A stretch of 64,000 bases of DNA from Girardia tigrina (taxonomy: Eukaryota). The notes under the pieces are model-generated. The model was not told the origin of the DNA. It searched no databases and was given only the letters and a program-made list of their open reading frames with translations. The stretch covers positions 1 to 64,000 of the forward strand of contig MQRK01239514.1 of assembly GCA_001938485.1 (NCBI GenBank), given 5' to 3'. Each line of letters opens with the position of its first letter. Position 1 is the first letter of the stretch. The translations under genes and the position numbers were made by a program. This document shows positions 19,441 to 61,230 of this stretch, piece by piece.

Positions 19441-20278
19441 ATTAGCAATATTTAAATTTATTATTATTTAATAGAGATTATTTACAAAAATTAATTATTC
19501 AAAAATTTAAAGAATGAGCCCGTCCTTCACAATTATTATTATTATTATTATTATTAAAATTAACACTTACTTCTAAAATTGTTTTTTGAAAAATGAAAAT
19601 TTTCCTCTTGGGCGATGAATGATGATCGGTTCGACCAATCGGCACATCATTTCATCGTCCAAAGGAATTTACAATTGGCAAAATAAAATAAAAATTTTGA
19701 TTAATGGATAAATCCATTAAACATGCAATCGGCCTAAACATTCAATCGATTGACTGGCTGTGTTTATATCTGTCTCTACCAGCTTCGTATAATGCCTTAT
19801 GTCGTCCTTACGGGTGATGTTCCGATGTCATCAGAATGGATTGGAAATTGAATTTTCATTTTAACGAGATCCGCAGTTGGCGGATAAATGATAATTAGTC
19901 GTGATTTTCACGACAGCTAACGAATGTTAGAATTTACAAATTTTAGTAATTTGAAAAATTAGAATTATTTTTAATTAAATAATATTTTATATTTTATATA
20001 TTTATTATTTATATAAAAACAAAATTGGGTATAAATACCCTTCAAAAATTCAAAAAACTACGACAAAAACTGAAACAAAAAATAATTCAAAGCAAAACAT
20101 TAATCGACAATTCATTTTTTATTCGGCCTCAATTATTATTTAAAGGATCTATGTACAATATTTCGAAGAGTATATCTTGTGATTATCAAATATAAATTTC
20201 TATAATATTTGTTGTTGATCTCAATTGCAATAAATTTAACAGTATCAATTATTGAGCTGGGTTCGAGCTACGAACAAG

Positions 20279-23840: not shown

Positions 23841-24969
23841 NNNNNNNNNNNNNNNNNNNNNNNNNNNNNNNNNNNNNNNNNNNNNNNNNNATATATATAT
23901 ATATATATATATATAATTCATTGAAATCGGAATTAAAAATACCAATTCCAAATTTTATTTTTAATTTCCATCTTGAACAGTTATGAAGAACCCTCAGAGT
24001 ACCGTTCCTTACACCGCACCAAGTAATTTAAAATAACCAAATCGATTATAACCTAAGATAATTAAATGTCTTAAAAGATTGATTTCGTCAGCAAAATAAA
24101 AAAGAGAATATTTGTTTAAAAATTCACTTATTGTTATTTAAATAAATAATAAAATTTGCACTACATTTATTCTTAATAATAAACAGGTGATCAAAATAAA
24201 ACATACAAATATTTAAAAATATATTATTTATTAAACTTCCTTTCCCTAAAAAACAGCATTTTAAAACCAAAATTTAAGTCAGAAATCAGAAATCTTTTTG
24301 AAAAATTAAAAAATATTTAAAGCAATATATACAGTAAGTATATATCAACCTCCTAAGTTGAAAACTCTATAAATTAAAAATCTCTGCAAGTTTAAATGCC
24401 GTCAGCCTCACAAGCCAAAAATAATATGTTTTATCTTCTTTAAGTTGAAAATCTCTTCAATGTCAATGCGGTAGAACTTCCAAAGTTAAAAAATTTAAAA
24501 GTTAAAAAAACCAGTAAATTGAAAAAAAAATTTAACTCCTTATGAAAATATAACTTTTAAAACTGCAGTTTTAATTTTCAATTAAAACCGTTTTTATAAT
24601 TTAATGTAAACTAAATGTAACATTATTATGATGAAATTGCGAAAATATTATAAAAATAATTCATTGTATATTTGTTTGAATATTCAGATATTGGTATTTG
24701 TATTTGAATTCAATAAAGCATATTCTTGTTGCCGTTTTATTTATCTTTATTTAACACTAAAAGTAAAAAAGTAAAAAAAAAGTATAACAAAAGGCATCTC
24801 ATGACCCAAAAATCAATAAATTTCATATTACGACCAGTACCAACGAAAACAGAAGATGAATAAAATTTTGAAAAGGCTCAGCTACAGTGTATGAAATCTC
24901 TTAGACAAACCTCTCTTTATTCATGGATCATTAGAAAATAAATAAATTTATTAATACACTTATTCTTCT

Positions 24970-26914: not shown

Positions 26915-27993
26915 CAGGGTGCGGCAGCTATTTGAGAACACGTAATATAGACACCATATCTTTTTGTGTGTTATAATTACATAATTTTATTTTTGCTGGT
27001 AGACATGGCAGAAGCTACTCTNNNNNNNNNNNNNNNNNNNNNNNNNNNNNNNNNNNNNNNNNNNNNNNNNNNNNNNNNNNNNNNNNNNNNNNNNNNNNNN
27101 NNNNNNNNNNNNNNNNNNNNNNNNNNNNNNNNNNNNNNNNNNNNNNNNNNNNNNNNNNNNNNNNNNNNNNNNNNNNNNNNNNNNNNNNNNNNNNNNNNNN
27201 NNNNNNNNNNNNNNNNNNNNNNNNNNNNNNNNNNNNNNNNNNNNNNNNNNNNNNNNNNNNNNNNNNNNNNNNNNNNNNNNNNNNNNNNNNNNNNNNNNNN
27301 NNNNNNNNNNNNNNNNNNNNNNNNNNNNNNNNNNNNNNNNNNNNNNNNNNNNNNNNNNNNNNNNNNNNNNNNNNNNNNNNNNNNNNNNNNNNNNNNNNNN
27401 NNNNNNNNNNNNNNNNNNNNNNNNNNNNNNNNNNNNNNNNNNNNNNNNNNNNNNNNNNNNNNNNNNNNNNNNNNNNNNNNNNNNNNNNNNNNNNNNNNNN
27501 NNNNNNNNNNNNNNNNNNNNNNNNNNNNNNNNNNNNNNNNNNNNNNNNNNNNNNNNNNNNNNNNNNNNNNNNNNNNNNNNNNNNNNNNNNNNNNNNNNNN
27601 NNNNNNNNNNNNNNNNNNNNNNNNNNNNNNNNNNNNNNNNNNNNNNNNNNNNNNNNNNNNNNNNNNNNNNNNNNNNNNNNNNNNNNNNNNNNNNNNNNNN
27701 NNNNNNNNNNNNNNNNNNNNNNNNNNNNNNNNNNNNNNNNNNNNNNNNNNNNNNNNNNNNNNNNNNNNNNNNNNNNNNNNNNNNNNNNNNNNNNNNNNNN
27801 NNNNNNNNNNNNNNNNNNNNNNNNNNNNNNNNNNNNNNNNNNNNNNNNNNNNNNNNNNNNNNNNNNNNNNNNNNNNNNNNNNNTACGTGTTAATATATGT
27901 AAAATTTTAAATTGTAATAAATGTTATTTTTCTGTTGTATATTCATTTTTTGAACTTTATGTCATTTTGTTCTCAAATAGCTGCCGCACCCTG
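26915..27993 (+). mobile_element. Tc1/mariner superfamily element, rosa/DD41D-like TIRs (interior in N gap)
   Basis: TA TSD; perfect 26-bp TIR CAGGGTGCGGCAGCTATTTGAGAACA. Confidence 0.85.
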
Positions 27994-29111
27994 TATTTAT
28001 CGTTAATTTAGAATTTATTTTGTTTATATTTTTATTTATTCACATTAAAAGAGTTCATCGAACGTTAATTTGTTCAATTAGGTCTTTTACACTTCTTACC
28101 ATATTCAATAGCTGTGATATATGAGTGTATTTTCTCCAACTTGAAACCCTCCATAAGTTGAAAAAAAATTTCTGCACCGCGAATTTCAACTTATAGGAGT
28201 TTTACTGTATATGTATATATTTTTTTTGTCTTTTATTAAAAATCAGTTTTTATATAAAATTTGGAAATTAAATTAAAAAAANNNNNNNNNNNNNNNNNNN
28301 NNNNNNNNNNNNNNNNNNNNNNNNNNNNNNNNNNNNNNNNNNNNNNNNNNNNNNNNNNNNNNNNNNNNNNNNNNNNNNNNNNNNNNNNNNNNNNNNNNNN
28401 NNNNNNNNNNNNAATTTATATAAAAATTGATTTTTAAGAAAAGATAAAAAATGATTTAAAAGAAATTTGTAAATGAAAAATAGAAGAAATTTCACTTTAA
28501 TTATCATATAAATAAAAAAAACGCGGATAATTCAAATTGATTATTATCCATTATTTTGTTCAATATTTTGAAGTGTAATTTTAAGACAGAATCGATATTT
28601 TGAGAAAACTGTACGAATAATCGTTATCCTTTTTCTTGAAAAGAAACGTAATATTGGATAAAAAAATAATGAAAAATCAATATCGAAAGATTTTTTTTAA
28701 AAATATCACGTTCATGCATTTTTTAAGAAAACAACATTTAAAAATATTTATTCATCAATAAATTTGTTGTTGAAAATAAGTTTTAATTTTTTATTTAAAA
28801 TAAATATTCTTAAATAAAATAAATTTACTCTAAATGCTATTAATTTTGATGGAACAATCGTCTTCATCAAACTAAACTCAATTGGAATATAAAACGGATT
28901 CAGGAAAATAATGGAAGGGAAAACGACAATAATATTGCTCTATAATGTAACGTATTGTTTAATTAGTAAAGTTTATTTAAGTAATTGTAAGACTTTGTGT
29001 TGACAATTCAATAATTACTGAGAAAAGGGGATTCGTGAAGCATTGATGATCAAATCCTTTGATCCTAAAATCAGTGTGCAAGCACCATATTTTTCAACTT
29101 CATTGCAAATA

Positions 29112-30407
29112 TTAGGTTGGTCGAAAAATAATGGCGGTTTTGGGACACAAACTTCAAAGAAGTGCAAAATCACAGAAACAAAAGTTTATTAATCAAAGTA
29201 TGAACCGTTGGTATCAATACATTTTTGCCAACGAGAAACAAGTCGTTTTATTCCATCAGCATAAAATACATCGGTTCTCGAAGCGACGAATTCTTGGGAG
29301 GCATTTTGAGCATCATTTTGGTTTTTGAAATTTTTTTCACGTGGGAAGTTATACAAATGCCTGAAAAAGTAGAAGTCCTTTGGAGAGAGGTCTGGTGAAT
29401 ATGGTGGATGAAGCAGGGTTTCATAGCCCAACTCATTAAGATTTTGAAGAGTCACTTTTGAAATATGAGGTGTAGCGTTATCATAAAGAAGGACGGGACT
29501 TTTTCGATTGACCAATCCCGGACAAAGGGTTTTCAATTTCTTATGCATTTCATCAATTTCATGTCAGTACCCCTCCGCTGTGATTGTTTCACCTGGATTC
29601 AAGAAACTATATTGGATGATTGCAGCATCACACCACCAAACTGTCACCATAACCTTACGGGGTGTTAGTTTCGGTTTTGGAAAGTGTTTCGGTACTTCAT
29701 CTTTGTCCAACCACTGTGCAGATCGACGTCGNNNNNNNNNNNNNNNNNNNNNNNNNNNNNNNNNNNNNNNNNNNNNNNNNNNNNNNNNNNNNNNNNNNNN
29801 NNNNNNNNNNNNNNNNNNNNNNNNNNNNNNNNNNNNNNNNNNNNNNNNNNNNNNNNNNNNNNNNNNNNNNNNNNNNNNNNNNNNNNNNNNNNNNNNNNNN
29901 NNNNNNNNNNNNNNNNNNNNNNNNNNNNNNNNNNNNNNNNNNNNNNNNNNNNNNNNNNNNNNNNNNNNNNNNNNNNNNNNNNNNNNNNNNNNNNNNNNNN
30001 NNNNNNNNNNNNNNNNNNNNNNNNNNNNNNNNNNNNNNNNNNNNNNNNNNNNNNNNNNNNNNNNNNNNNNNNNNNNNNNNNNNNNNNNNTCGTTGCACTG
30101 TGCGCTCAGAAGCTGTTCCCTTGCCAAACCCTTTATTGATATTGCGAGCCGTTTCTGCTGCTTTACGACCCAGTTTAAATTCGTACAAGAAAATTGCTCG
30201 AATTTTAAGTTTTTCCATTATTAATTTAGCACCGTAAATATTCTAAAAAAATAACAGCAATATGTTAATAATGGTTATAGGAATATACAGCTAGGCATAA
30301 GATTTCAAATAATATCTAACACTAATGCATTTAAACTTATATACATATCAAAGTAGATAAACAAAGTATAAAGCTCAAAAACCGCCATTATTTTTCGACC
30401 AACCTAA
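29112..30407 (-). mobile_element. Full-length mariner (cecropia/Hsmar1-like), ~1.3 kb, frameshifted transposase
   Basis: TA TSD. Perfect ~30-bp TIR TTAGGTTGGTCGAAAAATAATGGCGGTTTT. MEKLKIRAIFLYEFKLGRKAAETARNIN, RRSAQWLD, KVMVTVWW, YDNATPH, HPPYSPDLSPKD. Confidence 0.95.
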
Positions 30408-34550: not shown

Positions 34551-35315
34551 ATGAATCAGACTCGAATATATCGAAAACCAACTGATACCGGTTTGTACAG
34601 TTGTCCAAACAGTTTTTCTGACCCAATATACAATAGGAACATGATTAAAGGTTTGGAACATAGAGTCTGGGGTTTAACATCAACCATTGAGATATTTGAT
34701 AATGAAGTTGATGAACTTCATAATAGGCTTTCTAAAAATGGATTTAATAAAAAGTATTTAAATAAAATCATAAAAGATACTGTTGAATCCATTTATTTAA
34801 AATCAAATAATGCATCAAATATAACTTCGGGAAATGACATTGATAATCAAATGACTATCCATCTAAAATTACCGTACTCAGAGAGAGCAAAAGAGTTCAA
34901 ACGATTTTTAGAACATCGAACATCCGTTGGCTTAAAATTGAGAGTAATCTTTTTAACTAATAAATGCCGGAACTATTTTTCCAACAAATCAAAAACTCCT
35001 TTGTGTATTAAGGCAAATCTAGTTTATCAATTCAAATGTCACAAGTGCGAAGCCTTGTACATTGGAGAGACAAGTCGTCATTTCCGCACTAGAATTGCTG
35101 AACATACTCTATCGAGTAGAAATAGTTCGATATTGAGCCATATTAAAAGATGTAAAGGTAATCTTATGGATTACAATAAAGATTTTAAAGTGATTTTAAA
35201 TAATTTTGACACAAATTATGAAAGGATTATTGCCGAAGCATTGTTAATAAAGTATCATAAACCATGCTTAAACGTACAAGGTAATTCATCTAATCATATT
35301 AAAGTTTTTTTTTAA
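34551..35315 (+). pseudogene. PLE RT C-terminus/GIY-YIG endonuclease ORF (254 aa, truncated)
   Basis: ORF track; VY...YIG and CCHH-associated residues present; frameshift just upstream. Confidence 0.85.
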
Positions 35316-41600: not shown

Positions 41601-42340
41601 TGTGTTTCCCGTATAATTGATGAATTGAAGTGAAACAAACAGTAGTGAAACAAACAAAAACTAGTTTATTCATATTTTCTAAACGGTGTTAATACGAATT
41701 CTTGATAAATTGAAAATAAGGGAGAAATATAAATACACCGCTAAAATACGTTATTTCGATAATTTTATTTCCAATAATGTCACGGTAAATCTTAGTTTAA
41801 TTGTACCTATTAAGAATTAAAATTCTGATTTTCCGAGAGCTGATTGTCGATATACTGAGAGATAGCAACAACGGCACATATTGACATTCCGACAGATAAT
41901 ATCCTCGGAAGTACGACAAAACTACAAATTACCGAGTGACATGACAATGCCGCAAGTCTAAACCTACACGACAGAACACATTGCCACAAGTTTTTAAAAG
42001 ATAAATACATAACAGTGCAACCAGTGATACATTACATATCGAATGCAGACACGAGTAACAATAGGAGTAACTGATATATCACCCCCGAGCGACGCTTTGC
42101 TAGGTGGGGGGTCCATAACTCATCCCGCCTTTATCAGAACCCGATGGCCCTTCAGACTCGGCACTGCCAGGCAGATGTCGAGCGAGAAGAGGCGTCCGAC
42201 CCACAAATGAATTTAGTAATTAAATAAGTATTAAAGCGGTTTGTAAAATAGTATAAGTTGAGATTGGGTTGTGGCTGACCCCTAATAGCCACTGGGGGCT
42301 CTGAGCACTTAAAACTGTTATGAACAAAAGGGTTGTGACA
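38654..42340. mobile_element. Giant (3.7 kb) solo-LTR-like element, copy A
   Basis: TGTTGCGGTCG...GGGTTGTGACA termini; 4-bp TSD ATTT. Both ends are homologous, in inverted orientation, to 43504-45990. No coding ORF. Confidence 0.8.
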
Positions 42341-43503: not shown

Positions 43504-45990
43504 TGTCACGACCCCTTTGAGTGAAAACATTTTTGCAAGCTAAAGAGCCCCCAGTGGTTATTAAGGGTCAACCACAACCCAATGTCATTTTAGAAATTGG
43601 TCTGCTTCTTTTAGTGATTTTATTTGTAAGCGAGTCGGACGCCTCTTCTCACTTGACATCTGTCTAGCAGTGCCAAGCTCGAAGGGCCTGGGGGTTCAGC
43701 TAAAGACAGGACGGGCTATGGCCCCCCGCCTAGATCAGTATAAATAGGGGATGATTTTACGTGTGCTACTGTATTGTCTGCTAGCATATTGAACATGTTT
43801 GCTATGCCCGTCACTTTGTTCTGTGTGTCGTTATACTTGCGGCATTATGTTTGAATGTACGCTGATTGTCACTATCATATGTTGTGTGGGAGACTTGCGG
43901 CATTGTTGTGTCTGCAGGTGAACTTGCGGCATTGTTCTGTTATATCCTTGATCTGTCTAAAATTTATAAACCATTAATTCATATCGATTATATCAATTTA
44001 TTATATATTTACATAGCATTTATTTATGAGTTCAAGCATCGTTATTTTTTATATGTTACTTGTGACACTGTTATGTATTCTCCAACGTGTGGCATTGTTA
44101 TGTTTTGTCATACTTGCGACAATGTTGTGCCTTTAAATAAAATTATTAAATATTATGTTCATTGTGTCATCCTTTAGTTCATACTATTGCATCTCACTTT
44201 AAAGCATCATTATGTCGTTATGATCTATGTTTCACACATGTGAACTGTTTTACATATGGGAAATTATTGTGTCAATTCCCTCGACGGCTAAATTAAATAT
44301 TAAATATAGCAAATACCACATGTCAATTGTTAAACGTTAAATATCAAATGTTGGAATATTACATTTTGAAATATTTGAAATATTAAATATTATTTGAAAT
44401 AGTAAATGAGAAATAATAAATGCTAAATACGAAATATCAACAACCACTTTATGAAGTTATGCACCTATTTACAGTTTATATCAGATCATTAGTTTATATC
44501 GACTCGTTTAATAATAATTCAGATTTTCAATAACTCATTTTATTCTAACTCATTTCAACTGAGCTTATAAACTGACGCGACATATTCTAATAATGAATTC
44601 ACTCGGCATATGAATCATTCTCTGTCTACATATTGATTCATATCTTCGCGTCCTCACAACAGCTAATCTGTAGGCCGTCGCTGCCTGTATGCAGTTATTC
44701 TCTGTCGGACTTAGCTCTAAAATTAATTCCGATTCTAACAACAAATTTATACACGGATTTATGTTATTGATTATTTGCATCTGGCAGTTTTCTTGAAATT
44801 TCTCGTGTGTTAATGTGGAGTATTGTTTCATTAGTAAATTCTCTTGGATTACGACGGGGAATTAGCGCTCTACCTGGAGTATCAAAATCAGACTAAAATT
44901 CAAAGTTGGTTAAAAATTAACTGGTAAGATAATTATCATAATATAATCTAATCAGATTCTAGAAACAAACTCACAGCAAATTTAACAACAAAATTTACAA
45001 TTATGATGGGATCCGGAGAATGTTCTCTCTACGATTGTTTCACTGCTGTTTAACTAAATGCTCGGTCTGCTGCTATCGTGTCGGTTCTCCGTGTCAACAC
45101 TTCTCGCTCGGAATTTCTCTGGCTTTGCAAGGGTTTTGCGTGTCCTCACAATTGTTAACGTCGATTCAAATAGTGTCTCGTGTGACGAATGATATTATCT
45201 TTTGTCCAATGTTCACTTATGTCGGTTTTGATGGTTTTCTTGTTTTGCTTTGTTTTAGCGTTCTCTTTATAGTGTGTTCGTTCATTCTGGAATTACTCGC
45301 GGCTTTTATATCACGGTTCTAGCATACCTTTACTCTATTGCTTCCAATCACAATCTGCCAACGAGCCATTCTACAGCTTTCGGAATACTGGTTGGTCAGT
45401 TGCTGGCATTGTCGTGGTGCACGTGTCGGTATGTACATGATTCTAAAAGTGAGATTTTGATTTATTATAGGATTCCGTAATTGTGTGCTTGCAGGTGGCT
45501 GATGTCATGTGGCTTGTGATTCACGGGTTAATCATCGCGAATAATCGTGCGATGGTTTTTATGGACTTTTTGTTGACTCATGTAAGTTTTAATTAATTTC
45601 TTTATATTTGTTAATTAATTTTCTTACTTTAACAGAGGTTTAACTCTACTCGGAAAAATGTTATGATTTCGCGGATTCTAAAAATAGATTACTCTTGCGA
45701 CGGCCTCTCAGAAGAGGGTCAGTCATTCAATTTCGATCGCTAGGTAAGCCTTGACATTACTTCTTATTTTTTCTCATTTACATGGTTATTTTAGCATCCA
45801 AAACATCTTAACACCGTTATTCGGGGCCGCAATACTCCAAGGGTGTAGTGCTGCCATGTGTATACTGTTTTACGTTCGAATATATGTATTAAATCTCATT
45901 GCCTTCTTTCTTTGTCTTTTTGTAATATATTTACTGTTAACGTTTTGTAAGGGGTTTATTTGTCTATAAAATGGGTTTCCGACCGCAACA
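43504..45990. mobile_element. Giant (2.5 kb) solo-LTR-like element, copy B, inverted relative to A
   Basis: TGTCACGACCC...CGACCGCAACA termini; 4-bp TSD CAGG. 43540-43730 is the reverse-complement homolog of 42100-42310. Confidence 0.85.
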
Positions 45991-46713: not shown

Positions 46714-48084
46714 TTAGGGTGAGTCATAAGTTGTGGGGCACTCTTTCCAAAGTAATTATCTTTAATTACAACATGAATTGTCGAATCGATATTAATTGAA
46801 TTTGTATATCGTAATAAAGCTCATAAACTGAAGTTTCAGTATTTGTAAGAAAATCATGATTTTAGTTCATTCTAATTTTTTAAACATTTTAGAAAATTAT
46901 GGAAAAATTTGAAATTAGAGTACTTTTGAAATTTTTCTGGAAAAAAGGTCTGAGTTCAAGGGCTGCCGTAAAGGAAATTTCCNNNNNNNNNNNNNNNNNN
47001 NNNNNNNNNNNNNNNNNNNNNNNNNNNNNNNNNNNNNNNNNNNNNNNNNNNNNNNNNNNNNNNNNNNNNNNNNNNNNNNNNNNNNNNNNNNNNNNNNNNN
47101 NNNNNNNNNNNNNNNNNNNNNNNNNNNNNNNNNNNNNNNNNNNNNNNNNNNNNNNNNNNNNNNNNNNNNNNNNNNNNNNNNNNNNNNNNNNNNNNNNNNN
47201 NNNNNNNNNNNNNNNNNNNNNNNNNNNNNNNNNNNNNNNNNNNNNNNNNNNNNNNNNNNNNNNNNNNNNNNNNNNNNNNNNNNNNNNNNNNNNNNNNNNN
47301 NNNNNNNNNNNNNNNNNNNNNNNNNNNNNNNNNNNNNNNNNNNNNNNNNNNNNNNNNNNNNNNNNNNNNNNNNNNNNNNNNNNNNNNNNNNNNNNNNNNN
47401 NNNNNNNNNNNNNNNNNNNNNNNNNNNNNNNNNNNNNNNNNNNNNNNNNNNNNNNNNNNNNNNNNNNNNNNNNNNNNNNNNNNNNNNNNNNNNNNNNNNN
47501 NNNNNNNNNNNNNNNNNNNNNNNNNNNNNNNNNNNNNNNNNNNNNNNNNNNNNNNNNNNNNNNNNNNNNNNNNNNNNNNNNNNNNNNNNNNNNNNNNNNN
47601 NNNNNNNNNNNNNNNNNNNNNNNNNNNNNNNNNNNNNNNNNNNNNNNNNNNNNNNNNNNNNNNNNNNNNNNNNNNNNNNNNNNNNNNNNNNNNNNNNNNN
47701 NNNNNNNNNNNNNNNNNNNNNNNNNNNNNNNNNNNNNNNNNNNNNNNNNNNNNNNNNNNNNNNNNNNNNNNNNNNNNNNNNNNNNNNNNNNNNNNNNNNN
47801 NNNNNNNNNNNNNNNNNNNNNNNNNNNNNNNNNNNNNNNNNNNNNNNNNNNNNNNNNNNNNNNNNNNNNNNNNNNNNNNNNNNNNNNNNNNNNNNNNNNN
47901 NNNNNNNNNNNNNNNNNNNNNNNNNNNNNNNNNNNNNNNNNNNNNNNNNNCAACTTGCAGAACGTTGGGTACAATGTATTGAACATAATGGACTTTATTT
48001 CGAATCATAATCTTTATTGTGCGTTGTTTTATGAACATTTTAATTTTTAATAAAAAGTGCCCCACAACTCATGACTCACCCTAA
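46714..48084 (+). mobile_element. Full-length mariner element (interior in N gap)
   Basis: TA TSD. TIR TTAGGGTGAGTCAT(A/G)AGTTGTGGGGCACT. Transposase N-terminus MEKFEIRVLLKFFWKKGLSSRAAVKEIS. Confidence 0.92.
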
Positions 48085-50104: not shown

Positions 50105-51750
50105 TAAGGTGGAATTCTTTATGTTTTGTTTAATTTAAAATAATTAAAAATTATAAATTATAACCTCGTGCGGCATCCGCGGAATCGCACGCGTCAACGA
50201 AAACCAGAACCGGTCGGACTGAACCCCGTACTACTACACCTAATCCTGCGGTGTACAACGAGTCGACATGACCTCATTAATTGTATCAAAAGACATCGGG
50301 TGGACGGGACAACCGCATTGCTCGTAACTCCGGACGGTACTGCTCGTCATACAGTAGACGATACACAACGGGGAACCGCCATGAATTGGTCACGGCCCCG
50401 ACACGCAATTATGTGTACAACCAGTGGTCACTGGACTAGATCGGCCAGCACCTCATTGGTGTTAGAAGTGGGATCCAGAGATCCGATCACGGTAAATATT
50501 CGTAAATAAATGTCGAAATACAGTTGTTATACCACCCACGCATCTAATATTCATTACATGCGCACCAAAATTGTAACGGCAAAATCCACAACGTCCACAT
50601 TATCAACAGCTGAAACAATCTCGTCGACAACATGGACAACTACACCAGAAATGGCAATGACAATCATAACAACCAAACCGACAACGACAGCGAGAAATCA
50701 CCCCTAGACATCAGCACAGTCGGAAGCAAAGTCATCTGGCACAATGAGGGTCTGGGGACCATCTCCACAAAAGCAAAAGGTGACGAAACCCCGAAAAGAG
50801 CCACACGACACTACAGAAACATAATCGGGTGCACAACACGGTCGTCCATCACGCTTACATACCAATACCATCAGAAACACCTCATATGCAACACCGTCAC
50901 ACCACAGTAAACACAACAATAAAACACACTCACAGCATCACGTCCAAACTACACTCGACTACCACAGGCAATCCAACATCATACACCCACAAAACAACTG
51001 CGTTCCGACAAAATATTCATTCTTACAGGCCTCCAACTCTATCATACTACCGCAGTGCCACACCTACCATGATCCGCATTTTTAGGTAGGGGCTCATGTG
51101 GCACTCGAAAAATTAATTAATAAAGAAGAATTATTTAAAAATATAACAGTTGTTTTAATATGCAAAATAAATTATGTATGAATAAATTATTCAAATCGGT
51201 GTTATCAAATTGTCTGAATTAGAATAAAGGAATTATTATTTGTTTTTTTCGTATCTGTTTATTTCCTTCCGCCGTTTTCTCACAGTCAATAAAGTCGACC
51301 GCTCCGAAATACAATGTTCAACGACGGGTTGAATCGATCCGACCGACCTCAATGCCACAACACTTAGACCTGTGGTTCACACATTGTCCACTCGAAGAGG
51401 CGATCCGGTGTTGTGCGAACGGACCGAGCAGACTACTCAATGTTTCAAGCATTACCCATGGCTTCACAGTTGGCGATGCACAACGGGGAACTGAGCGACA
51501 AAAAACCGCGATAACAATCCGAGGTGACCCACCGATCGACGAGCTCTCTCTATACGGGGTTCCGTGCTGGAATCGACGCGATCGGTCAATCTCTCCCTGT
51601 GGTAATTCTCCGTACGAATAAGGGGTGTTGGCTGTCACAGCTCGATCCGATGGCCGTCACTTCCCTTTGTTTACATAAATTGGAGGAATTGCATATTCAT
51701 TCGGTATAATTATTGTTGTGTGTGACTGTATATTCTCGTTAAGTGCTACA
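50105..51750 (+). mobile_element. Short non-autonomous LTR retroelement with tRNA-Leu PBS and dissimilar LTRs
   Basis: LTR end ...CAGCACCTCA (50455), then PBS TGGTGTTAGAAGTGGGAT. ~640-bp interior. PPT AGGTAGGGG, then LTR TGTGGCAC...GTGCTACA (51097-51750). 5' start approximate. Confidence 0.7.
50457..50474 (+). promoter_or_regulatory. Primer binding site, tRNA-Leu
   Basis: One mismatch to TGGTGTCAGAAGTGGGAT, the complement of the tRNA-Leu 3' end; 1 nt after LTR CA. Confidence 0.8.
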
Positions 51751-52176: not shown

Positions 52177-52889
52177 TGTTGAGGTAATATTTTAAAATTT
52201 ATAAATAAAAATATAAAAAATTTAAATTAATAAAATTAATTAATAATATAGGTCAGTTTGACCTTAATTATAATTTTAATTTTTTATAATAATATAAAGT
52301 CACTTGACCTTAATTATAACTTGGATAATTATTTTTTGGATAAACATCCATCATCCAGTTAATTTACTAGATCAAATTTTGATCTATAATAATATAGAAG
52401 GTCTTAATTATAATTTTGACTTTTTTTTGGATAAACATCCGTCATCCAGTTAATTTACTGGATCAAATTTAGATCTATATAAAGATCAAAAAAAATGAAT
52501 TGAGATAGATGTTAATAAAAAATAAACTGAAAAGTTTTCGACAAATATTTAATAACACTGAAATAGTGTAAAGAATTTCTAAAAAAAAGTAATTTTTTGA
52601 AAAAGATTTTCGATTTTTAAATTTATCGTATCAATTATATATATAAATATATATAGATATATAAACGTGCTGGAAAGTGCGTTCTAAACTTTTCAACTAC
52701 AGTTATTCGAGTTGTCGCTAAAGACTCTCGAATTTTAAATATAAAATCGGCCAGGGGCCAAATAAACTCTGTTCTTTTAACATCTTTAGCTTATTAAAAA
52801 TTGTAATAAATTGTACATACAAAATAAATTTTATAAATAAAACCAGACTTTTCTTCTTGAATAGAATAAAACACAACTAACACTCAACA
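52177..52889 (+). repeat. 5' LTR (713 bp)
   Basis: TG...CA inverted termini; U3 direct repeats at 52250-52480; TATATAAA at ~52658; AATAAA signals; directly followed by PBS. Confidence 0.9.
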
Positions 52890-52893
52890 AATT

Positions 52894-52911
52894 TGGCGCC
52901 CAACGTGGGGC
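52894..52911 (+). promoter_or_regulatory. Primer binding site, tRNA-Lys(CUU)
   Basis: Exact TGGCGCCCAACGTGGGGC. Confidence 0.95.
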
Positions 52912-53076: not shown

Positions 53077-53846
53077 ATGAGTAAAAAGACAGGGCAGATA
53101 AGAATACAAAAATCATTAGATTTTCTTCCATTAGATAAATTTTCAGGCAAACAAGAAGACTTTGATACATATTTTACAGAATACAAAACTATACCATAAC
53201 ATGTGGTTGGGAAGAATTAGATATGATTAAAAGACTCCCATTATATTTACAAGGTTACACTTTACAAGCATTTGAAACAATAAATAAAGAGTTAACAGAA
53301 ATTGATAAGGTAATAAAACAATTAAGGGAAATAGTTGTAAAAGATTCAGAATTAAATAAAATATATACACGAGCATTTAGAAATCGTAAACAAAAACCAA
53401 AAGAAACAATAACAGAATATAGCTTTGTGCTAAGTAAATTAGCAGATAAAGCCTTCGGAGAAAGGGCTAGAGTAGGATCAATTGTTCAAGATCAGTTTTT
53501 AGAGGGTATACATGAGTATATAAGAAATGCATTGGCATTAATTGATTATACAGACTATAATGATTTAGTACAACAAGCTCGACGTATCGAAGTTCATAAT
53601 ATCGATAGAAGTAATATTGAAATTTGTGCCACAGGTCCACAACCTATTTTTAAGAAAAATGTAGATTCAAGGAACAGTCACCCTTCCGAAAAGAGGGGAG
53701 GTGGTGGTTTCTCGAATCGATTTAATAATAATAATGGAAATGTAAGAAATGATGATGGAGTGGAGCGCAATAATTTTAATAGAGCCCGAGTAAATAATTA
53801 TAGAGGAAGTTATAGAGGTCAAAATAATAATAGAGGGGGTAATAAT

Positions 53847-53883
<37 letters not shown>

Positions 53884-54218
53884 GAGGCAATATGAATAAC
53901 AATGATGGTAATAATTATAGAAACAGTAATAATGAAAGTAATAATTATAGAAATAATAATAGAGGTAATAATAATTATCGAGGTTCAAGAGGCCATTATC
54001 GAGGAAATAACAGTAATAATTATCGGAATAATAATACTGGTTTTAATAAAAATAATGATAATAAAATGATAAGAGGACAAGTAAATCAGGAAGAAGAAAT
54101 GAAATGTTTTACATGTCAAGGATGGGGTCACCTAGCAAGGTCTTGCCCATCAAATAGAAAATATTTTCCTCAAAATACAAAACGACCAATACATGGAGTA
54201 GAGGTAGCCATAGTCTAG
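53077..54218 (+). pseudogene. gag: Gag (capsid, Asn/Arg/Gly-rich linker, CCHC zinc knuckle); frameshift near 53197
   Basis: LDKFSGKQEDFDTYF, RKQKPKETITEY, DQFLEGI, CFTCQGWGHLARSC. Confidence 0.88.
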
Positions 54219-56845
54219 CCATAGTCTTTGGAGTTACACACTTTCGTCAATATCTATACGGTGCAGAAATCCTATTGAAAACAGATCACAAACCGTTAGA
54301 AAGTTTAATGAAAAATAAAAATGCATCAAGCAGATTAATTGGATGGGCTATGAGACTCCAAGATATGGATATAAAAATTAAATATAGAAAAGGTAAAGCA
54401 AATGCAAATGCAGATGCATTATCACGATTGCCAGTTGCAATACTCGAAAAACAACAACGATCATTAATAGATAAAACAATCGAAATAGCGTCAACAAATA
54501 TAGATATAAATGTTAAACAATTACAAGATCAGGATGAAAAATTACGAGAAATCAAATAGAAGTTAACAGAGAATAAAATTAAACAATATAAACTTATAAA
54601 CGGCACCTTAAAATATATAGATGGTGAGAAAGAATTAATTGTGATACCGGAATCACAAAAAGAAAATATCATGATGCAATATCATGATGGTGCACTAGGA
54701 GGGCACCTCTCACTACGAAAAACCTTCAATAGAATTAGANAAAAATATTATTGGGAAAATATGAGAAACGATATAGAGGAATGGATCAAATCTTGTACAA
54801 TTTGCGCAACTCGAAGAAATACAGGGAATAAAACAAAAGTACCATTACGGCCGATGCCAGTGCCAACAGCACCTTTCGAATTATGTGCGATGGATGTCGT
54901 GGGACCACTTCCAGAAACAATAAATGGTCATAAATATATTTTAGTTTTCATGGATCATTTTTCAAAATTTGCGGAAGTATTCGCAATGCCAAATCAAAAA
55001 GTAGAAACAATCGCACCAATTTTTGTGGAAAAAATAATATTCAAATATGGCCCACCCAAAAAGATATTAACTGATAGAGGTTCAAATTTTATGAGTGAAA
55101 TAATGAGTCAAGTTAATAAAGTTTTTAATATATTAAAATTAAATACTTCAGGATATCATCCTGAGACTAATGGATTAGTAGAACGATTTAATGGTACATT
55201 TCTGAACATTATGTCGTGTTTAACAAATAGAAAGTAATGTGACTGGTGTACATTCATTCCATATGGATTATTTGTTCATAACAATACTGTGTCGGAAGCA
55301 ACCGGTTATAAACCTTCATACATTTTATATCTGAGAGATATTGTCATGCCGATAGATTTGGATTTGAATCCAGCACCATCAAAATTAATGGAAATACCAG
55401 ATTTCGTCACCTTAATGACTGAAATGTTAAACACAGTTTATAAGAAAGTAGGGTTACAGATGAAGTACACTCACGAAAAGTACAAAGAACAATATGACAA
55501 AAAAACACAACCTCATTCATATAAAGTTGGAGATAAAGTTAGAATCTATGCACCTGAGCCTAAAAATGGATTAACACCAAAATTGGCAAGGCCATATAAA
55601 GGGCCATATGAAGTAGTAAAGGTAACACCAACCAATTTATTTCTAATAAAGAAGAAAAACTCAGATCCTATTGTTGTACACGTAAATCGTTGCAAAAAAG
55701 CCGAAATCGTACCCACCAAATCATATAATTTGAGATCAAGTCAGTTAGAAATAGCTATGATTGAAGAAAATCTTACATCTCAATGCAAAAAAGCAACAAT
55801 TTCTGTCCTTCAAGAAGGTATAGGATTCCAATATGCACTTGGAAATCATTATGATGATAAATTACTCAGGAAAGTAATGTATGAACAACCACAATTATTT
55901 GCGTTAAAGAATTCGTTAAAACAAACCCCGATTCAAGTCGCTTTGTGTAGACGGAAATTTCACAAGGTAGAAAGAATGCTTCGAGATAAAATATGTAGAT
56001 ATCCAGGATTATTGGACTCTCAAGACGAAAATGGTTCTACAGCATTAATAGACGCAATACGACTTCAGGCTTCTTTTGAAAATATAATACGACCACTTAT
56101 AATTTACTCTGATTTAATCTTACAAGATTTCTCGGGGAAAACAGCATTTGATTACGGCGAACAAAGTAAATCAAAAATAACAAGGAATGCACTGCAAGTC
56201 ATACAAAATAACAATATTACTTCAATAGAAGGGAAACGAGCAGTAGTACTGTTTGAACATCAAAATCAGGATCATCAAATATACTTAAAGAATAAGGATA
56301 AAATTAAAAATGAAAAATTAGATAAAGATAGTACAACTGTACGTTATAGAAATAGAAATAGAATATTAAATAATACAATTTCATGTTCCGAGAGTAAAAT
56401 TTCTTTATGTATGGTGACCACGCATATAATTATTATCCGTTTAATACTATATTTAGTTAAAGGGGTTGAGGCGAAAGAACTTGGTTTTCGTAGAAGTGCA
56501 ATGCAAATAAGAATTTCGGATGGAACAGTGAAGATAGAGAATACACATCAAATTAGTTATTTGTCTTCTAAAATATATACACAAAACGAATATAAAATAA
56601 ATAATGGAATAAAAAGTATAGAATTTAAGATAACTAATGACCTACGATTAAGACTGGAAGTATATATTAAAAATTTACTGCAACACAATATTTCAATATA
56701 TATACAGAAACAATTTGATCAGACAAATCGAACAGAGATACGGGAAACTAGATATTTTAGGTCGCCCCAAGGACCTGGTTTAATGTTACTTCTCACATAT
56801 GATAGTACATATTCTGTAAGATTTAAAAGCAGATTTCAGAAATGA
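54216..56845 (+). pseudogene. pol: Pol remnant: RNase H C-terminus, integrase (HHCC, DDE, GPY/F), ankyrin repeats, signal-peptide-led extension; in-frame stops at 54557 and 55235
   Basis: LAIVFGVTHFRQYLYG, TDHKPL, NANADALSR; HDGALGGH..CTIC; MDVVGP, TDRGSNF, NGLVERFN; YKGPYEVV, VHVNRCK; KQTPIQVAL, QDENGSTALIDAI, QDFSGKTAFDY. Confidence 0.88.
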
Positions 56846-57533
56846 CAAGCCACTACATTAGTTACAATAATTCCTCCGGTAATTAATATAATTTTGAAAA
56901 AGAATTATATGGTAATTTGGATTATTCCACCTAATATCACAGTAGAAATAGGAAGAAATTCATATCGATTTCGAATTTGTGTCAAAATATGTATAACATA
57001 TAAACACGGTAGGATGAATTATTTACCGATAGATAAAAAACAAAATTATACAATTATGAATATCTTTATTTATCAAGAAACAGACTTAGTAACGACCTTA
57101 CAATCAAATCAAAAACCTTACGGAAATCAAAACAAAACACCGAAAAGTCCGAGATAAAAATGCTTAAAATATTAATATATATAATTTCATTAAATATTAT
57201 TTTAATATTTCTAATCGAAATCGAAATTTTCTTTAATGTTTTATAAAATAAATAGATTCCACAACATCCAGAGAATGTGGAGGAGCTGATGCGGGATCTC
57301 AATATGCTTAATAGTAATGAAATGAAACTGGCGCTGTACGTCTGCCGCTTTCACCGGAAGCTGTACGCGTCAGTCATCGGTGAATCCTTAGATATCCTGC
57401 TCTAGCTCCTGCACTTGCAAATCGCTTTTATACTAAAATAATAGATGTCAATCTATGGAATATCAACATACACTATAGTTCACAGTTCCAAGAGCCACAA
57501 TTAATAAAATATGATGATGAGAATCGTGGATCA

Positions 57534-57902
57534 ATGATATTTGAACCACAAATACAAGATACAAGTTCGACAAAGCAAAGCATAATCACTACTGAACATA
57601 TGCAAATAAAAAGACATACAATGTCATACAAGCTTTTAAATTATAGCAGTCATACAACAAGCAAAAATATAGAGGTTCTTACATCATTAGCAAAACTAAG
57701 GTTATATAATGATTTCGATAAACATGATAGCTGGTCATTCATATTATTAGGCGTAAGCCTAGTTTTATTTCTACTCCTTACAATAGTCGGAATAAGACAA
57801 ATATACCATAAATATAAAAAGAAACTTTTGGCTTTAAACTTGTATCGTACATCCCTGGGGAAATACCTGCCTGGGATGTACGTAAATACTACACAGGTAT
57901 AA
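57534..57902 (+). pseudogene. C-terminal part of an env-like type I membrane protein
   Basis: Hydrophobic helix SWSFILLGVSLVLFLLLTIVGI followed by basic stop-transfer RQIYHKYKKK; env position between pol and 3' LTR. Confidence 0.55.
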
Positions 57903-58763
57903 AAATCATATATAGATGCTGTATGGACATATAGATTTTAAATCTCATATATATTTGTTTATTTTTTTACATTTCTATTTTCTATTGTGTTGAAATGAAC
58001 ACAATTAATTTACTTTTCTTAATTTTAGATTTCAATATGATACCAGTATCAGAACAATCCAGACAGCTCCTCCAAAAGATGCAGTAAAAATATTCTTTAC
58101 AAGCTCTGCCTATCAGAGCCGATGAACATTTAGTTACTTATAATCGTTTTGCTCAAAGAGAAACAGTGCTTGAGGAACAAATTATGAAATCTGACGTTTT
58201 CGATCGAGATCAACGAGTAACTAAAGAAATCCAAAACATTTGCCCATTTGCAAAATTAGAATATGCTAAACAGAGAACATACAAAATAAATTTTATATAT
58301 AAAACCAGACTTTTCTTCTTGAATAGAATAAAACACAACTAACACTCAACAATAGGAAGTAGTTATAATACCACTTTCAATTCAAATTCGGATTTTTAAA
58401 AATCAATAAATAATCTTATTCCTACAAAATTTACAATATCCAATTCCTTCAAAATTTAAAACCAACTCTATACAACTTGTGAATATTTTTAAATTCAAAT
58501 ACTATAGAATTGTTAAATCACTGGGCGAATAACAATATGAGCGACAACAAAATAAGTTAATAAATCATTTTCCATTATACATAATTCAAAAAATTAATCC
58601 TTCTTAAATACAAGCACTAATCACCACCATCATAAATAAGAGAAGATTGTGCATATTCCAAAACTAATAATAATACTCTGAAGAATATGAACAAAAGTTT
58701 GTCTAATTTGATCTATAAGAGACTTATATAAATTTACGAATTCAAATTAATTTATTATATTAT

Positions 58764-61230
58764 TGTTACTGAATCTCAATTCTTTCACGTAATACATATA
58801 TTGCTCTCTTCTTATTCCTTTTTTTAATTCGCTTTTCTAATTAATAAATATTTAATAATATATATTTCGATATCTATATTTATCGTCAGGCAAGTTATTT
58901 CATCACATGATTAAATTTGTTTTTGAGATCAGTTACTTAACTACACTGTTTTTCAGAATCAGCGTTCAACTACGATAGAAACGTACTAGGTCATATTCAA
59001 CAAAGAATTTAGAAACTCGAAGTTATCGGTGATAAATTTCACAAAAACTGTCGAATTGAATGCATTCGCTGTAAAACACAAAATATTTTGATATTTATTA
59101 GGGATGAATTTACTTCCATTCTAAATGAAAAAGAAATTAAGACTTGCAAAATTATTTCAAAATTACCAAAGGTTATATTTGTTATTTAAACAAATCTTCA
59201 TTTTTTTATTTTCTTTTTTTAATTTAATATTCCAAATTTTTTTTTTTAAAAATTCGATTATAATTCTAAATTTTAGAAAATCAAAATTTCTATTTCCGAA
59301 AATTAAGAAATTAACAACAACACTCTCTTACACCCCCGCACGCAAAAAATTTTTAATTTTCTCCACATTTCTTTCACATGTTTTACCAGACATATCTTCA
59401 AGAACATATCTTGTATCATGTATTTTTCGAATGACTTTATATGGTCCGTCGTATCTCCCTTGATCTATTGTTCTAGATTCTACTTTTACCAATATATCAT
59501 CTCCTGGAAAAAATTTTCTTCAAGTGATAGGCTCATATTTCCGCTCATATTAAAATATTTTGCTATTTTTCCATCCCATTTCCCCCTGCTAATGCGTTTT
59601 CCGAAAATGATTTCAGCTGGACTCATCCCGATAGTCGTCTGTAAAATGGCATTGAATGAGAACTCGATCTCCGGTCAAATCTCTGCCCAGTCCGAAATTG
59701 TTTCTGCAATGTTGCGTTTATCAGTTCTCTCACTGTAAGGAATTGTCGTTCAATTTTTCTGTTTGTGTTATGATTCAAAAACCTTACCACAATCCACATT
59801 CATCGCCTTGGGAGAACCAAATTTCAATATCCAATTCCGCATTATTCCTTTTATTATCGATTTTACATCTTGTTTCGATATGGCTAATAATGTAATGTAT
59901 TTATTAAACTGATCAATGATAAAATATATTTCTTTTTCAATGGTAGAATATATTTCTTTTTCCCAGAAGTCTCTTTCAACGGTCCACAAATATCCATATA
60001 AATACATTCAAAATCATCGGCAGTTATCATGTTCTCTTTTGTCTTAGCCGTATATGTTTTATACTTTTGGCATAATTTACATTTACGTACAATCTCTTTG
60101 ATCCTTCAGCTTGTCAAAATCCTTAGAGTTTTTTAAATAATACTCAACTTTTCTTGCACAGGCGTTTGCCAACATCCGATGGGTTTCCCAGATAATATCT
60201 TCGAGTGACTTTGTAGTTTTATCTTCTGATACAACATTCAGTGCACGTGTCTTGATTCTTTCTTTCTTAGTTTCCTTGTGTTGCATCAAACATTGAGTAC
60301 TCGTACCACAATTCATCTTTGATAGCATATCAGCATTCTTGTGCAAAAATCCTTTTCGAAATTCTAACTTCATATCCAGACTGCTCAGATAGTTAAGCCA
60401 CGTTTGAAACTGCGATGTAATTTGCTCCTTAGTGTTCAGCATAAACGTGATTGCTTTATGATCAGTACGCAAAATAAACCGTTTACAATACAGAAAATGT
60501 CTAAAATGGTTACAAAAATAATACATGGCAAGCAATTCTTTTCTTGTAACACAATAGCCCTTCTTGTGGCTATTGATTGATCGCGATCCATAAGCTACAA
60601 ATATTTGCATTCCTTGATCGTCCTTCTGTGCTAACACGGCTCCAATTGTGTCGAAACTAGCATCCGTATCTAAAATAAAATCTCTTTTCATGTCTGGAAA
60701 ACGCAATACCAGGCTTGTCATTAATGCATTCTTCATCTCCAATTCAGTTTTTTATTGTTTTTCGGGCCGCATAATTGTTCTAATACTCCAGCATTCTTTA
60801 CATACTCTTATTAATCGTCGATAATAGTTAAAAATAGATAAAAAAGATAATAGTTATAAATGTGTCTGTTTTTACACCGTCTTCGTTAACTTTATGTCCA
60901 AGGAATTAAATTTCCCGTTTCAACAATTGATATTTTTTGGGTTCAACCGTAATCCTGTTTTTCTAATGATATCTAAAACTTGATTCAAAACAATAGAGTA
61001 TCGATCCTGATCTTTTGTGTATACCAAGATATCATCTAAGTATACAGAGGCACCCTTGATCCCTCCGACTACCTTTGTCATCGTTTCTTGGAAAGTTCCC
61101 AGTGCAGTTGCTATAGCAAATTGCATATGAGTAAAACAATACTGTCCTTGTTTTGTAGAAAATGCAGTTTTCTGCTGAGATTTATGTGGAAAATAGGTAT
61201 ACTAGTCCGCTATTGTTTAGATATTTTCAT
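58764..61230 (-). mobile_element. pol: Decayed Gypsy element: RT-RNase H-integrase fragments, PPT and 3' LTR
   Basis: VYLDDILVY; LDTDASFDTIGAVLAQ, RKELLAM, TDHKA, NADMLS; DCGKVFES. Minus-strand GCGGGGG|TGTAAG at 59332. Outer LTR boundary uncertain. Confidence 0.85.

What the first reader, a model, noticed from the sequence alone, without database searches (positions are those of the whole stretch)
55289..56845. Gypsy pol polyprotein extended in frame by an ankyrin-repeat module
Seen: after the integrase GPY/F tail (YKGPYEVV, VHVNRCK, YNLRS) the same stop-free frame continues into about 3-4 ankyrin-like repeats at ~55820-56200 (KNSLKQTPIQVALC, SQDENGSTALIDAI, LQDFSGKTAFDYG). This lies inside a TSD-flanked provirus with near-identical LTR ends. 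Established: the usual extra domain at this position in Gypsy integrases is a chromodomain; ankyrin proteins are common host-modulating genes of large viruses but are not a standard LTR-retrotransposon module. Inference: the module is either an integration-targeting adaptor or a released anti-silencing/anti-immune effector. Flanking LEIAMI and KISLCMV resemble hydrophobic Gypsy protease sites, which would favour release.
Basis: partly seen in the sequence, partly recalled or inferred. Interest (0 to 1): 0.85.

Follow-up and report, generated by a model that had tools for sequence, protein, structure and literature searches.

The report
Ankyrin domain in a Gypsy pol frame
A dead copy of a small Gypsy-type retroelement really does carry an ankyrin-repeat domain after its integrase; related elements, including giant Burro-like ones known from flatworms, share this domain, so it is an old, selected accessory part and not a one-off capture.

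Summary
The core observation holds. The 518-codon ORF at 55289-56845 is the longest open frame in the window. It runs from the integrase C-terminal domain into a genuine ankyrin (ANK) domain of about four helix-pair units (55820-56263).

- **ANK evidence.** The window sequence alone is weak against Pfam Ank_2 (16.7 bits, below the cut-off). A profile of five family members hits only ANK proteins in the PDB (best E 4.6e-21). An AlphaFold model (pLDDT 82.8) matches DARPins.
- **Relatives.** Six relatives from four metagenome samples carry the homologous ANK block in the pol frame after integrase. Four are giant Burro-like elements. In five of the six, which all reach that far, a hydrophobic segment, about 400 residues and a TM helix follow it. 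The ANK array is under purifying selection (dN/dS about 0.14 between two giants).
- **Prior knowledge.** Ankyrin repeats were already noted in planarian Burro/GYPSM1 elements.
- **State of this copy.** It is defective: protease, RT and most of RNase H are deleted, and stops are present.
- **Claims that fail.** Only 76 nt of terminal repeat are shared and I found no TSD. One proposed "protease site" is the start of the hydrophobic segment.
- **Mechanism (inferred).** The domain is cut away from integrase and acts as a protein-binding adaptor.

Verdict: new member of a known kind, moderate interest.

The parts
52815..52890 (+). Left terminal direct repeat (3' end of a putative 5' LTR)
   Evidence: 76 nt, 98.7% identical to 58277-58352. 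Sequence further left has no counterpart on the right side.
52894..52911 (+). Primer-binding-site-like 18-mer starting TGG, 3 nt after the repeat
   Evidence: Read directly. I did not test which tRNA it would pair with (no tRNA gene in the window). It is absent from the six related loci.
53077..54218 (+). gag remnant (broken): capsid-like part, Asn-rich low-complexity region, one CCHC zinc knuckle
   Evidence: zf-CCHC E 0.0012 and a C-x2-C-x4-H-x4-C motif read directly. Homologous to the gag end of ORF1 of Burro-like locus L005 (E 7e-14). At least one frameshift and two stops (read).
54209..56845 (+). pol-frame remnant (broken), one frame throughout: RNase H tail, integrase, linker, ANK domain, spacer, hydrophobic segment, start of the membrane module
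   Evidence: tblastn with the ORFs of L001. One large internal deletion removes protease, RT and most of RNase H. There are 2 in-frame stops, 1 N and no frameshift. One further deletion of about 45-68 residues lies in the integrase-ANK linker, relative to both close relatives.
54644..55144 (+). Integrase zinc-binding (H2C2) and catalytic core (rve) domains
   Evidence: Integrase_H2C2 E 5.7e-22; rve E 7.7e-12.
55514..55702 (+). Integrase C-terminal (GPY/F-type) domain
   Evidence: MLVIN_C and Integrase_p58_C matches. 72-76% identical to L001 and L002. Eleven invariant positions across six members (A8).
55724..55768 (+). Junction motif: invariant Y-x-LRS end of integrase followed by a short hydrophobic motif
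   Evidence: Alignment A8. In the giants this lies 10-15 residues before the extra retropepsin-like domain. It is a candidate processing site by inference only.
55769..55819 (+). Variable linker, shortened in this copy
   Evidence: A2. The linker shows 30% identity and dN 0.87 between L001 and L002. Model pLDDT is below 50 here.
55820..56263 (+). Ankyrin-repeat domain: family-specific N-terminal cap motif, four helix-pair units (55856-56209) and a closing helix
   Evidence: Thirteen positions are invariant across five family members (A4).
56264..56398 (+). Charged, low-complexity spacer
   Evidence: Read. The equivalent spacer in the giants evolves fast (dN/dS 0.56).
56399..56455 (+). Hydrophobic 19-residue signal/anchor-like segment in the pol frame
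   Evidence: Kyte-Doolittle mean 2.08. A segment at the equivalent place is present in L001, L003, L004, L005 and L006.
56456..57902 (+). Remains of a membrane-glycoprotein-like module (broken), ending with a TM helix (57738-57794) and a short basic tail
   Evidence: Weak matches to the 400-residue downstream ORF of L001, covering only its residues 208-400, in two frames. TM hydropathy 2.95. At least one frameshift, one deletion and several stops. No Pfam family.
58277..58352 (+). Right terminal direct repeat (3' end of a putative 3' LTR)

Best explanation
Shown. The stretch is the 3' part of the pol frame of a dead, internally deleted copy of a small Gypsy-type LTR retroelement. Its gag, integrase and ANK block are homologous to those of giant Burro-like elements, the kind described from planarian flatworms. 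After the integrase C-terminal domain and a short disordered linker, the frame encodes a true ankyrin-repeat domain of about four units. A charged spacer, a signal/anchor-like hydrophobic segment and the remains of a roughly 400-450-residue membrane-protein-like module ending in a TM helix follow.

The order is integrase, then (in the giants) an extra retropepsin-like domain, then ANK, a hydrophobic segment, about 400 residues and a TM helix. This order is kept in one frame in five relatives from four samples. A sixth, short contig confirms integrase-linker-ANK. The ANK array is under purifying selection. It is therefore an old accessory domain of this clade.

Inferred. ANK is not part of the mature integrase. 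The polyprotein is probably cut at the conserved hydrophobic junction just after the Y-x-LRS end of integrase. ANK then acts as a cytosolic protein-binding adaptor, either free or held at the membrane by the following hydrophobic segment. Most likely it binds a host protein, in line with the host-mimicking domains reported in Burro and with the ANK domain of a planarian nidovirus. In this particular copy it does nothing: protease and RT are missing and the frame upstream carries stops.
For: - **ANK identity:**
- **Family trait:** P0054 (55% identical) and P0055 (43% identical, Ank_2 31 bits, above the cut-off) have integrase C-end, linker and ANK in one frame.
- **Giants:** L003, L004, L005/P0057 and L006/P0056 have Ank_2 at E 1e-10 to 4.5e-12 downstream of integrase in ORFs of 1934-2387 residues.
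- **Homology of the block:** the window ANK aligns collinearly with the first ANK block of the giants, including a non-ANK cap motif (E 4e-5, 7e-7 and 3e-8).
- **Burro-like nature of the giants:** L005 ORF1 holds gag, a mononegavirus-type fusion glycoprotein (E 9e-89) and protease in one frame, as described for Burro.
- **Selection:** L003 against L004 gives dN/dS 0.14 for the ANK array, 0.045 for RT-integrase and 0.40-0.56 for spacers. In the small family ANK dN is 0.41-0.70, with dS saturated.
- **Not an integrase appendage:** retropepsin-like domains with D-T-G-S lie between integrase and ANK in the giants and also after ANK in L005. A hydrophobic junction motif is conserved.
- **Constant downstream neighbour:** a hydrophobic segment lies 60-105 residues after ANK, and a second TM lies near the C-end.
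- **Analogy:** the best viral structural match is the planarian nidovirus polyprotein (E 1.3e-5, TMq 0.66). Its ANK is predicted to share a product with a TM domain and is proposed to mimic IkB (PMC6211748).
Against: - No cleavage, expression or binding partner is shown. The junction motif is only 4-6 residues long.
- The small family has no second protease domain, so release would depend on the normal protease.
- ANK similarity to the giants is only 17-30% identity, no higher than to some cellular ANK proteins. Common origin therefore rests on position, collinearity and the cap motif.
- No specific likeness to IkB/NF-kB ANK appeared among the 60 PDB sequence matches shown or the 14 scanned representative hits.
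- Synonymous sites are saturated or nearly so in every informative pair, so dN/dS values are rough.
- A planarian host is inferred from about 27% GC and Burro-likeness, not shown.
- The membrane modules of the small and giant forms show no detectable homology.
Confidence: 0.5

Rival explanations
1. Integration-targeting adaptor. ANK stays fused to the integrase C-terminus and tethers the integration complex to a chromatin or nuclear host protein, as the chromodomain does in chromoviruses.
For: ANK sits directly downstream of the integrase C-terminal domain, where chromodomains sit. There is no stop between them in any of the three small-family members, and no chromodomain is present. The linker is short in the window copy.
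Against: In the giants, 300-650 residues including a retropepsin-like domain separate integrase from the homologous ANK block. The linker in the small family varies in length by about 70 residues and evolves almost freely. The constant neighbour of ANK is the hydrophobic segment downstream, not integrase.
Confidence: 0.15
2. Cytosolic domain of a pol-frame membrane protein. ANK, the hydrophobic segment, the roughly 400-residue ectodomain-like part and the C-terminal TM helix form one product. The hydrophobic segment acts as a signal-anchor, and ANK faces the cytosol to link the membrane protein to Gag or to host trafficking or cytoskeleton.
For: The same order and similar spacing (60-105 residues) occur in the window, L001, L003, L004 and L006. 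It is all one frame with pol. The planarian nidovirus is predicted to have one product with a TM domain and ANK.
Against: In L005 a further retropepsin-like domain lies between ANK and the hydrophobic segment. The ANK-to-segment spacer evolves fast (dN/dS 0.56). The ectodomain-like parts of the small and giant forms are not detectably homologous. The topology is only predicted from hydropathy.
Confidence: 0.2
3. Passenger without function: a captured host ankyrin fragment that hitch-hikes in the pol frame and is open here only because the copy is young.
For: The window copy is young (1 mismatch in 76 nt of terminal repeat) and dead. Its own open frame therefore says nothing about selection.
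Against: The block is kept in frame in relatives that differ by 45-80% at the protein level. There are 13 invariant positions and dN/dS is 0.14. The linker and spacers around it have diverged far more.
Confidence: 0.05

Closest known systems
Burro / GYPSM1 giant Gypsy-like LTR retroelements of planarians (Jurka 2007; Grohme et al. 2018; reviewed in PMC6431247)
   Same: Gypsy-type gag and pol. Ankyrin repeats inside the polyprotein are reported for Burro in the literature. The window's gag, integrase and ANK are homologous to those of Burro-like metagenome loci, which carry a mononegavirus-type fusion protein in frame between gag and protease as described for Burro. All are AT-rich.
   Different: The window element is small: 5.5 kb between its repeats, and its relative L001 suggests well under 10 kb when complete, against more than 30 kb for Burro. 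It has one short ANK block, no second protease domain, and no BIR, MATH, BCL2-like or fusion-protein domain detected. I could not compare it directly with Burro reference sequences.
Chromoviruses (Ty3/Gypsy elements with a chromodomain at the integrase C-terminus)
   Same: An extra protein-binding module is encoded directly after the integrase C-terminal domain in the pol frame (general knowledge of the family).
   Different: The module is an ankyrin solenoid, not a chromodomain (no Chromo match at E<=1). In relatives it is separated from integrase by a protease-like domain.
ANK domain of Planarian secretory cell nidovirus polyprotein (PMC6211748)
   Same: A short ANK domain (about 100 residues, three repeats) lies inside a giant viral polyprotein of a flatworm parasite, next to a TM domain. 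It is the best structural match of the window model in the viral library (E 1.3e-5, TMq 0.66). It is proposed to modulate host signalling.
   Different: It is an RNA virus with no relation to retroelements. The match is only 20% identical, and no sequence-level comparison was made because the fetch is barred. The IkB-mimic idea is itself untested.
Ankyrin proteins of large DNA viruses (poxvirus ANK/F-box proteins, polydnavirus vankyrins, giant-virus ANK families)
   Same: They share the ANK fold and appear among the structural matches. They act as host-protein adaptors (my own knowledge, not tested here).
   Different: They are stand-alone genes of DNA viruses. No F-box/PRANC or other partner domain is found here.

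Membership tests
Ankyrin repeat superfamily (Pfam Ank_2, PF12796) | The single sequence reaches the curated Pfam score | tested here: not met
   Window ORF: 16.7 bits against a cut-off of 27.3, E 0.011. P0054: 16.0 bits.
Ankyrin repeat superfamily (Pfam Ank_2, PF12796) | Family-level sequence homology to ANK proteins | tested here: met
   P0055 scores 31 bits and the giants 42-47 bits. The profile of five members gives PDB hits that are all ANK among the 60 shown, best E 4.6e-21. All 14 scanned hits from the search of representative proteins are ANK proteins.
Ankyrin repeat superfamily (Pfam Ank_2, PF12796) | Stacked helix-turn-helix repeats of about 33 residues | tested here: met
   AF2 model with pLDDT 82.8 and four helix pairs. 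Foldseek best matches are DARPins and Notch ANK, probability 1.00. This is a prediction, not a solved structure.
Ty3/Gypsy (Metaviridae) LTR retroelement | gag with a CCHC knuckle; pol order protease-RT-RNase H-integrase | tested here: met
   The knuckle is read directly and zf-CCHC gives E 0.0012. The window keeps only the RNase H tail and integrase. The full order is seen in relatives L001 and L003-L006.
Ty3/Gypsy (Metaviridae) LTR retroelement | Two LTRs, a primer-binding site and a target-site duplication | tested here: inconclusive
   Only 76 nt are shared between the two ends. A PBS-like 18-mer is present. No duplication occurs at those bounds.
Burro / GYPSM1 giant planarian Gypsy elements | Giant size (internal region up to 25 kb) | tested here: not met
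   The window has 5.46 kb between its terminal repeats. Relative L001 has RT through to the membrane module within 5.4 kb.
Burro / GYPSM1 giant planarian Gypsy elements | Ankyrin repeats within the polyprotein | tested here: met
   See the ANK rows above. The feature is reported for Burro in PMC6431247.
Burro / GYPSM1 giant planarian Gypsy elements | Fusion-glycoprotein env in frame between gag and protease | not testable with these tools
   That region is deleted in the window copy and is not on the contigs of L001 and L002. It is present in related locus L005.
Burro / GYPSM1 giant planarian Gypsy elements | Sequence homology to Burro reference elements | not tested
   No Burro reference sequence was available through the tools. 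Homology is shown only to Burro-like loci: gag E 7e-14, integrase C-end 41-59% identity.
Chromoviruses | Chromodomain after the integrase | tested here: not met
   No Chromo family at E<=1 in the ORF.
Errantivirus-type env (baculovirus F-like) | The downstream ORF matches a known fusion-protein family | tested here: not met
   No Pfam family for the window or L001 downstream parts. No protein relatives found.

The most novel reading that the evidence does not exclude
ANK, the hydrophobic anchor, the roughly 400-residue ectodomain-like part and the C-terminal TM helix form one pol-frame-encoded membrane protein with a cytosolic ankyrin domain. This would be a kind of retroelement envelope or accessory protein not yet described, and the only env candidate in the small family. 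Two unrelated flatworm parasites, this Gypsy clade and the planarian nidovirus, would then have independently placed a short host-type ANK domain next to a TM segment in their polyproteins to act on the same host pathway.
Probability: 0.2. Interest if true: 0.65.

Novelty: new member of a known kind. Interest (0 to 1): 0.45.

Why it matters
Extra domains in retroelement polyproteins show how these elements deal with their hosts. Ankyrin repeats had been noted only in the giant Burro elements.

This work adds three points:
- A homologous ANK block also exists in a compact relative.
- It is under selection.
- It keeps a fixed place between integrase (or an extra protease domain) and a membrane-protein-like module.

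That gives a small, tractable family in which to ask what the domain binds. It also points to a parallel with the ANK domain of a flatworm nidovirus. The finding does not open a new category.

Tried and rejected
- **Single-sequence Pfam and PDB searches** were too weak to decide. The question was settled only with relatives.
- **Looking up the window ORF** in public assemblies found nothing on record.
- **Viral contig scan** found no relative.
- **Downstream ORF of L001:** a protein search gave no hits and Pfam gave none.
- **Membrane modules:** a profile-profile comparison of the giants' post-ANK module with that of L001 showed no homology (probability 0.05).
- **Structure of the giants' post-ANK module:** The single-sequence model had pLDDT 33.6 and was unusable, so I did not search with it. 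Its PDB sequence hits (E about 0.03 to a coronavirus spike RBD) are not significant, and I did not follow them.
- I did not resend those rows to that tool and replaced them with P0056 and P0057 segments.
- **LTR and TSD:** gapped and ungapped comparison of both flanks gave only 76 shared nt and no duplication.
- **dN/dS in the small family:** synonymous sites are saturated, so only dN is informative. L004 and L006 are too similar to inform.
- **Other negatives:** no tRNA or Rfam family in the window. No paper mentions the sample identifiers.
- **Rejected explanations:** chance ORF, one-off host capture, chromodomain.
Full report
**1. What is in the sequence**

The window is AT-rich (mostly 17-35% GC) and full of transposon remains. 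The ORF of the finding (55289-56845) is 518 codons long, 535 from stop to stop. It is the longest open run in the window. With an empirical stop frequency of 0.069 per codon, the chance of such a run is about 7e-17.

Its first 150 residues are the integrase C-terminal part. Upstream, in the same frame, lie the integrase zinc-binding and core domains and the last part of RNase H. Further upstream lies a gag remnant with one CCHC knuckle.

**2. State of this copy**

The copy is defective.
- **pol:** one large internal deletion removes protease, RT and most of RNase H. There are also two in-frame stops, one N and no frameshift in the retained part. One further deletion of about 45-68 residues lies in the linker, relative to both close relatives.
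- **gag:** at least one frameshift and two stops.
- **Downstream membrane module:** at least one frameshift, one deletion and several stops.

The two ends share only 76 nt with one mismatch. A PBS-like 18-mer follows the left repeat. I found no target-site duplication.

**3. Is it an ankyrin domain?**

Alone, the segment is below the Pfam threshold (Ank_2 16.7 bits). Its best PDB sequence hit is E 0.011, although all four hits with E<10 are ANK proteins.

A search of 1.84 billion representative proteins gave 53 hits at E<=1e-3. All 14 that I scanned are true ankyrin-repeat proteins, and none has RT or integrase.

With relatives added, the case is firm:
- A five-member profile (A4) hits 305 PDB sequences at E<0.01. 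The 60 shown are all ANK or DARPin, with the best at 4.6e-21.
- The AF2 model has pLDDT 82.8 and pTM 0.77. It shows four helix pairs at ORF residues about 190-307 plus a closing helix.
- Foldseek returns DARPins, Notch ANK and ANKRA2.

No chromodomain is present.

**4. Relatives**

*Small family.* Two proteins from one JGI sample, P0054 (55% identical) and P0055 (43% identical), have integrase C-end, linker and ANK in one frame. Ank_2 in P0055 passes the curated cut-off. The contig of P0055 (L001) shows RT, RNase H and integrase. These are followed by ANK, a charged region, a hydrophobic segment and a 400-residue ORF ending in a TM helix, all in one frame apart from two in-frame stops. L002 has one frame change.

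*Giants.* A metagenome scan and a further protein search recovered four giants: L003, L004, L005/P0057 and L006/P0056. Their pol ORFs are 1934-2387 residues long. Their order is (protease) RT, RNase H, integrase, an extra retropepsin-like domain with D-T-G-S, a longer ANK array, a hydrophobic segment, about 400 residues, a TM helix and a short tail. L005 has one more retropepsin-like domain between ANK and the hydrophobic segment.

*Burro-like identity.* L005 ORF1 carries gag, a mononegavirus-type fusion glycoprotein (E 9e-89) and protease in one frame. This is the arrangement described for planarian Burro elements, where ankyrin repeats were also noted (PMC6431247). The window's gag is homologous to that ORF1 (E 7e-14).

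*Homology of the ANK block.* The window's ANK aligns collinearly with the first ANK block of the giants. The alignment includes a cap motif that is not part of the ANK consensus.

*Host.* All loci are 31-33% GC. I infer a flatworm host from this and from the more than 70% A/T reported for Schmidtea (PMC11410931). This is not shown.

**5. Selection**

Between L003 and L004 (60% identical overall, both ORFs intact), dN/dS by region is as follows:

| Region | dN/dS |
|---|---|
| RT-integrase | 0.045 |
| ANK array | 0.14 |
| Extra protease domain | 0.27 |
| Spacers and ectodomain-like part | 0.40-0.56 |

In the small family dS is saturated. ANK dN is 0.41-0.70, against 0.13-0.18 for the integrase C-end and 0.87 for the linker.

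It is not met.

**6. How it most likely works**

*Shown:* the anatomy and its conservation.

*Inferred:* ANK is not part of mature integrase. Three observations support this.
- In the giants a protease-like domain separates integrase from ANK.
- A short hydrophobic motif follows the invariant Y-x-LRS end of integrase in all six relatives and the window copy.
- The linker is free to vary.

The constant neighbour of ANK is the hydrophobic segment downstream.

I therefore favour a protein-binding adaptor that is cut from integrase and acts in the cytosol. It would be either free or tethered by the hydrophobic segment, and would most likely bind a host protein.

Two published ideas point the same way. 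Burro's BIR, BCL2-like and MATH domains suggest meddling with host pathways. The planarian nidovirus has a short ANK domain predicted to share a product with a TM domain, and its authors propose that it mimics IkB (PMC6211748). That nidovirus polyprotein is the best viral structural match of my model.

The match is a lead, not proof. ANK folds all resemble each other, and I saw no specific IkB likeness.

The rivals are integration targeting, a cytosolic domain of the membrane protein, and a functionless passenger. They are weighed in their own sections.

**7. Novelty**

Ankyrin repeats in a Gypsy polyprotein are rare but already recorded for Burro/GYPSM1. The literature I could search has no other case.

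Three things are new here:
- a compact relative with a short homologous ANK block;
- evidence of selection on the block;
- the fixed order ANK, hydrophobic segment, membrane module.

I rate it a new member of a known kind, with interest 0.45.

**8. Steps left out, and a slip**

- I did not fetch the nidovirus sequence, because fetching a virus of animals is barred. The direct comparison is referred.
Other segments of L003 and L004 were later used only in local alignments and scripts.

Noticed in passing
L003:3300-3630, L004 ORF residues 1238-1334, L006 ORF residues 816-912, L005 ORF2 residues about 1060-1150 and 1767-1865: The giant relatives carry one or two extra retropepsin-like domains with a D-T-G-S motif inside the pol ORF after integrase. 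By sequence they are paralogous to the element's own protease (24.6% identity over 130 residues).
   Followed up: partly
L003:6867-8249 and 8592-9923; L004:7283-8743 and 9043-10374; L006:6240-7700 and 8000-9331: Two paralogous ORFs of about 450 residues follow the giant pol ORF. The second has an RNase_T (DEDD 3'-5' exonuclease) domain, which is unusual cargo for an LTR retroelement.
   Followed up: partly
L004 (JGI Ga0209893) and L006 (ENA ERZ27235085): Over 1934 aligned codons the two pol ORFs are almost identical (dS 0-0.05), although they come from independent samples. This indicates the same young element, probably from the same host species, in both datasets.
   Followed up: no
window 50250-51750: An island of 46-51% GC sits in DNA of about 27% GC, immediately left of the element. 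It has strong strand skews in places, no Rfam match and only short ORFs. Origin unknown.
   Followed up: partly
window 60203-61183 (-): Fragment of another Gypsy element (RT/RNase H only; RT_RNaseH E 4e-27) on the opposite strand.
   Followed up: partly
window 34551-35315 (+) and 18263-18643 (-): An ORF with a GIY-YIG nuclease domain (E 1.6e-5), and an ORF end with a Brinker-type DNA-binding motif (below cut-off) next to a masked N run. Both are probably other mobile elements.
   Followed up: no
window 19183-19449; 42107-42224 and 43610-43727: A tandem array of 46-nt units, and a pair of 118-nt inverted repeats 1.4 kb apart (75% complementary) that may mark a DNA transposon.
   Followed up: no
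window 53700-54000 and L005:3990-4400: The Asn/Arg/Gly-rich low-complexity region of gag is shared between the small element and Burro-like ORF1. It is therefore a family feature and not local simple-sequence expansion.
   Followed up: partly
window 57300-57400: A patch of about 46% GC inside the decayed membrane-module region, unlike its AT-rich surroundings. No other copy in the window.
   Followed up: partly
window 17378-18262, 18438-18566, 22942-23032, 23841-23890, 27022-27883, 28282-28412, 29732-30089, 46983-47950, 54740: Runs of N (3475 in all). Several of the long 'ORFs' listed mechanically in the window are open only because they run through these. One single N lies inside the integrase zinc-binding domain.
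   Followed up: yes
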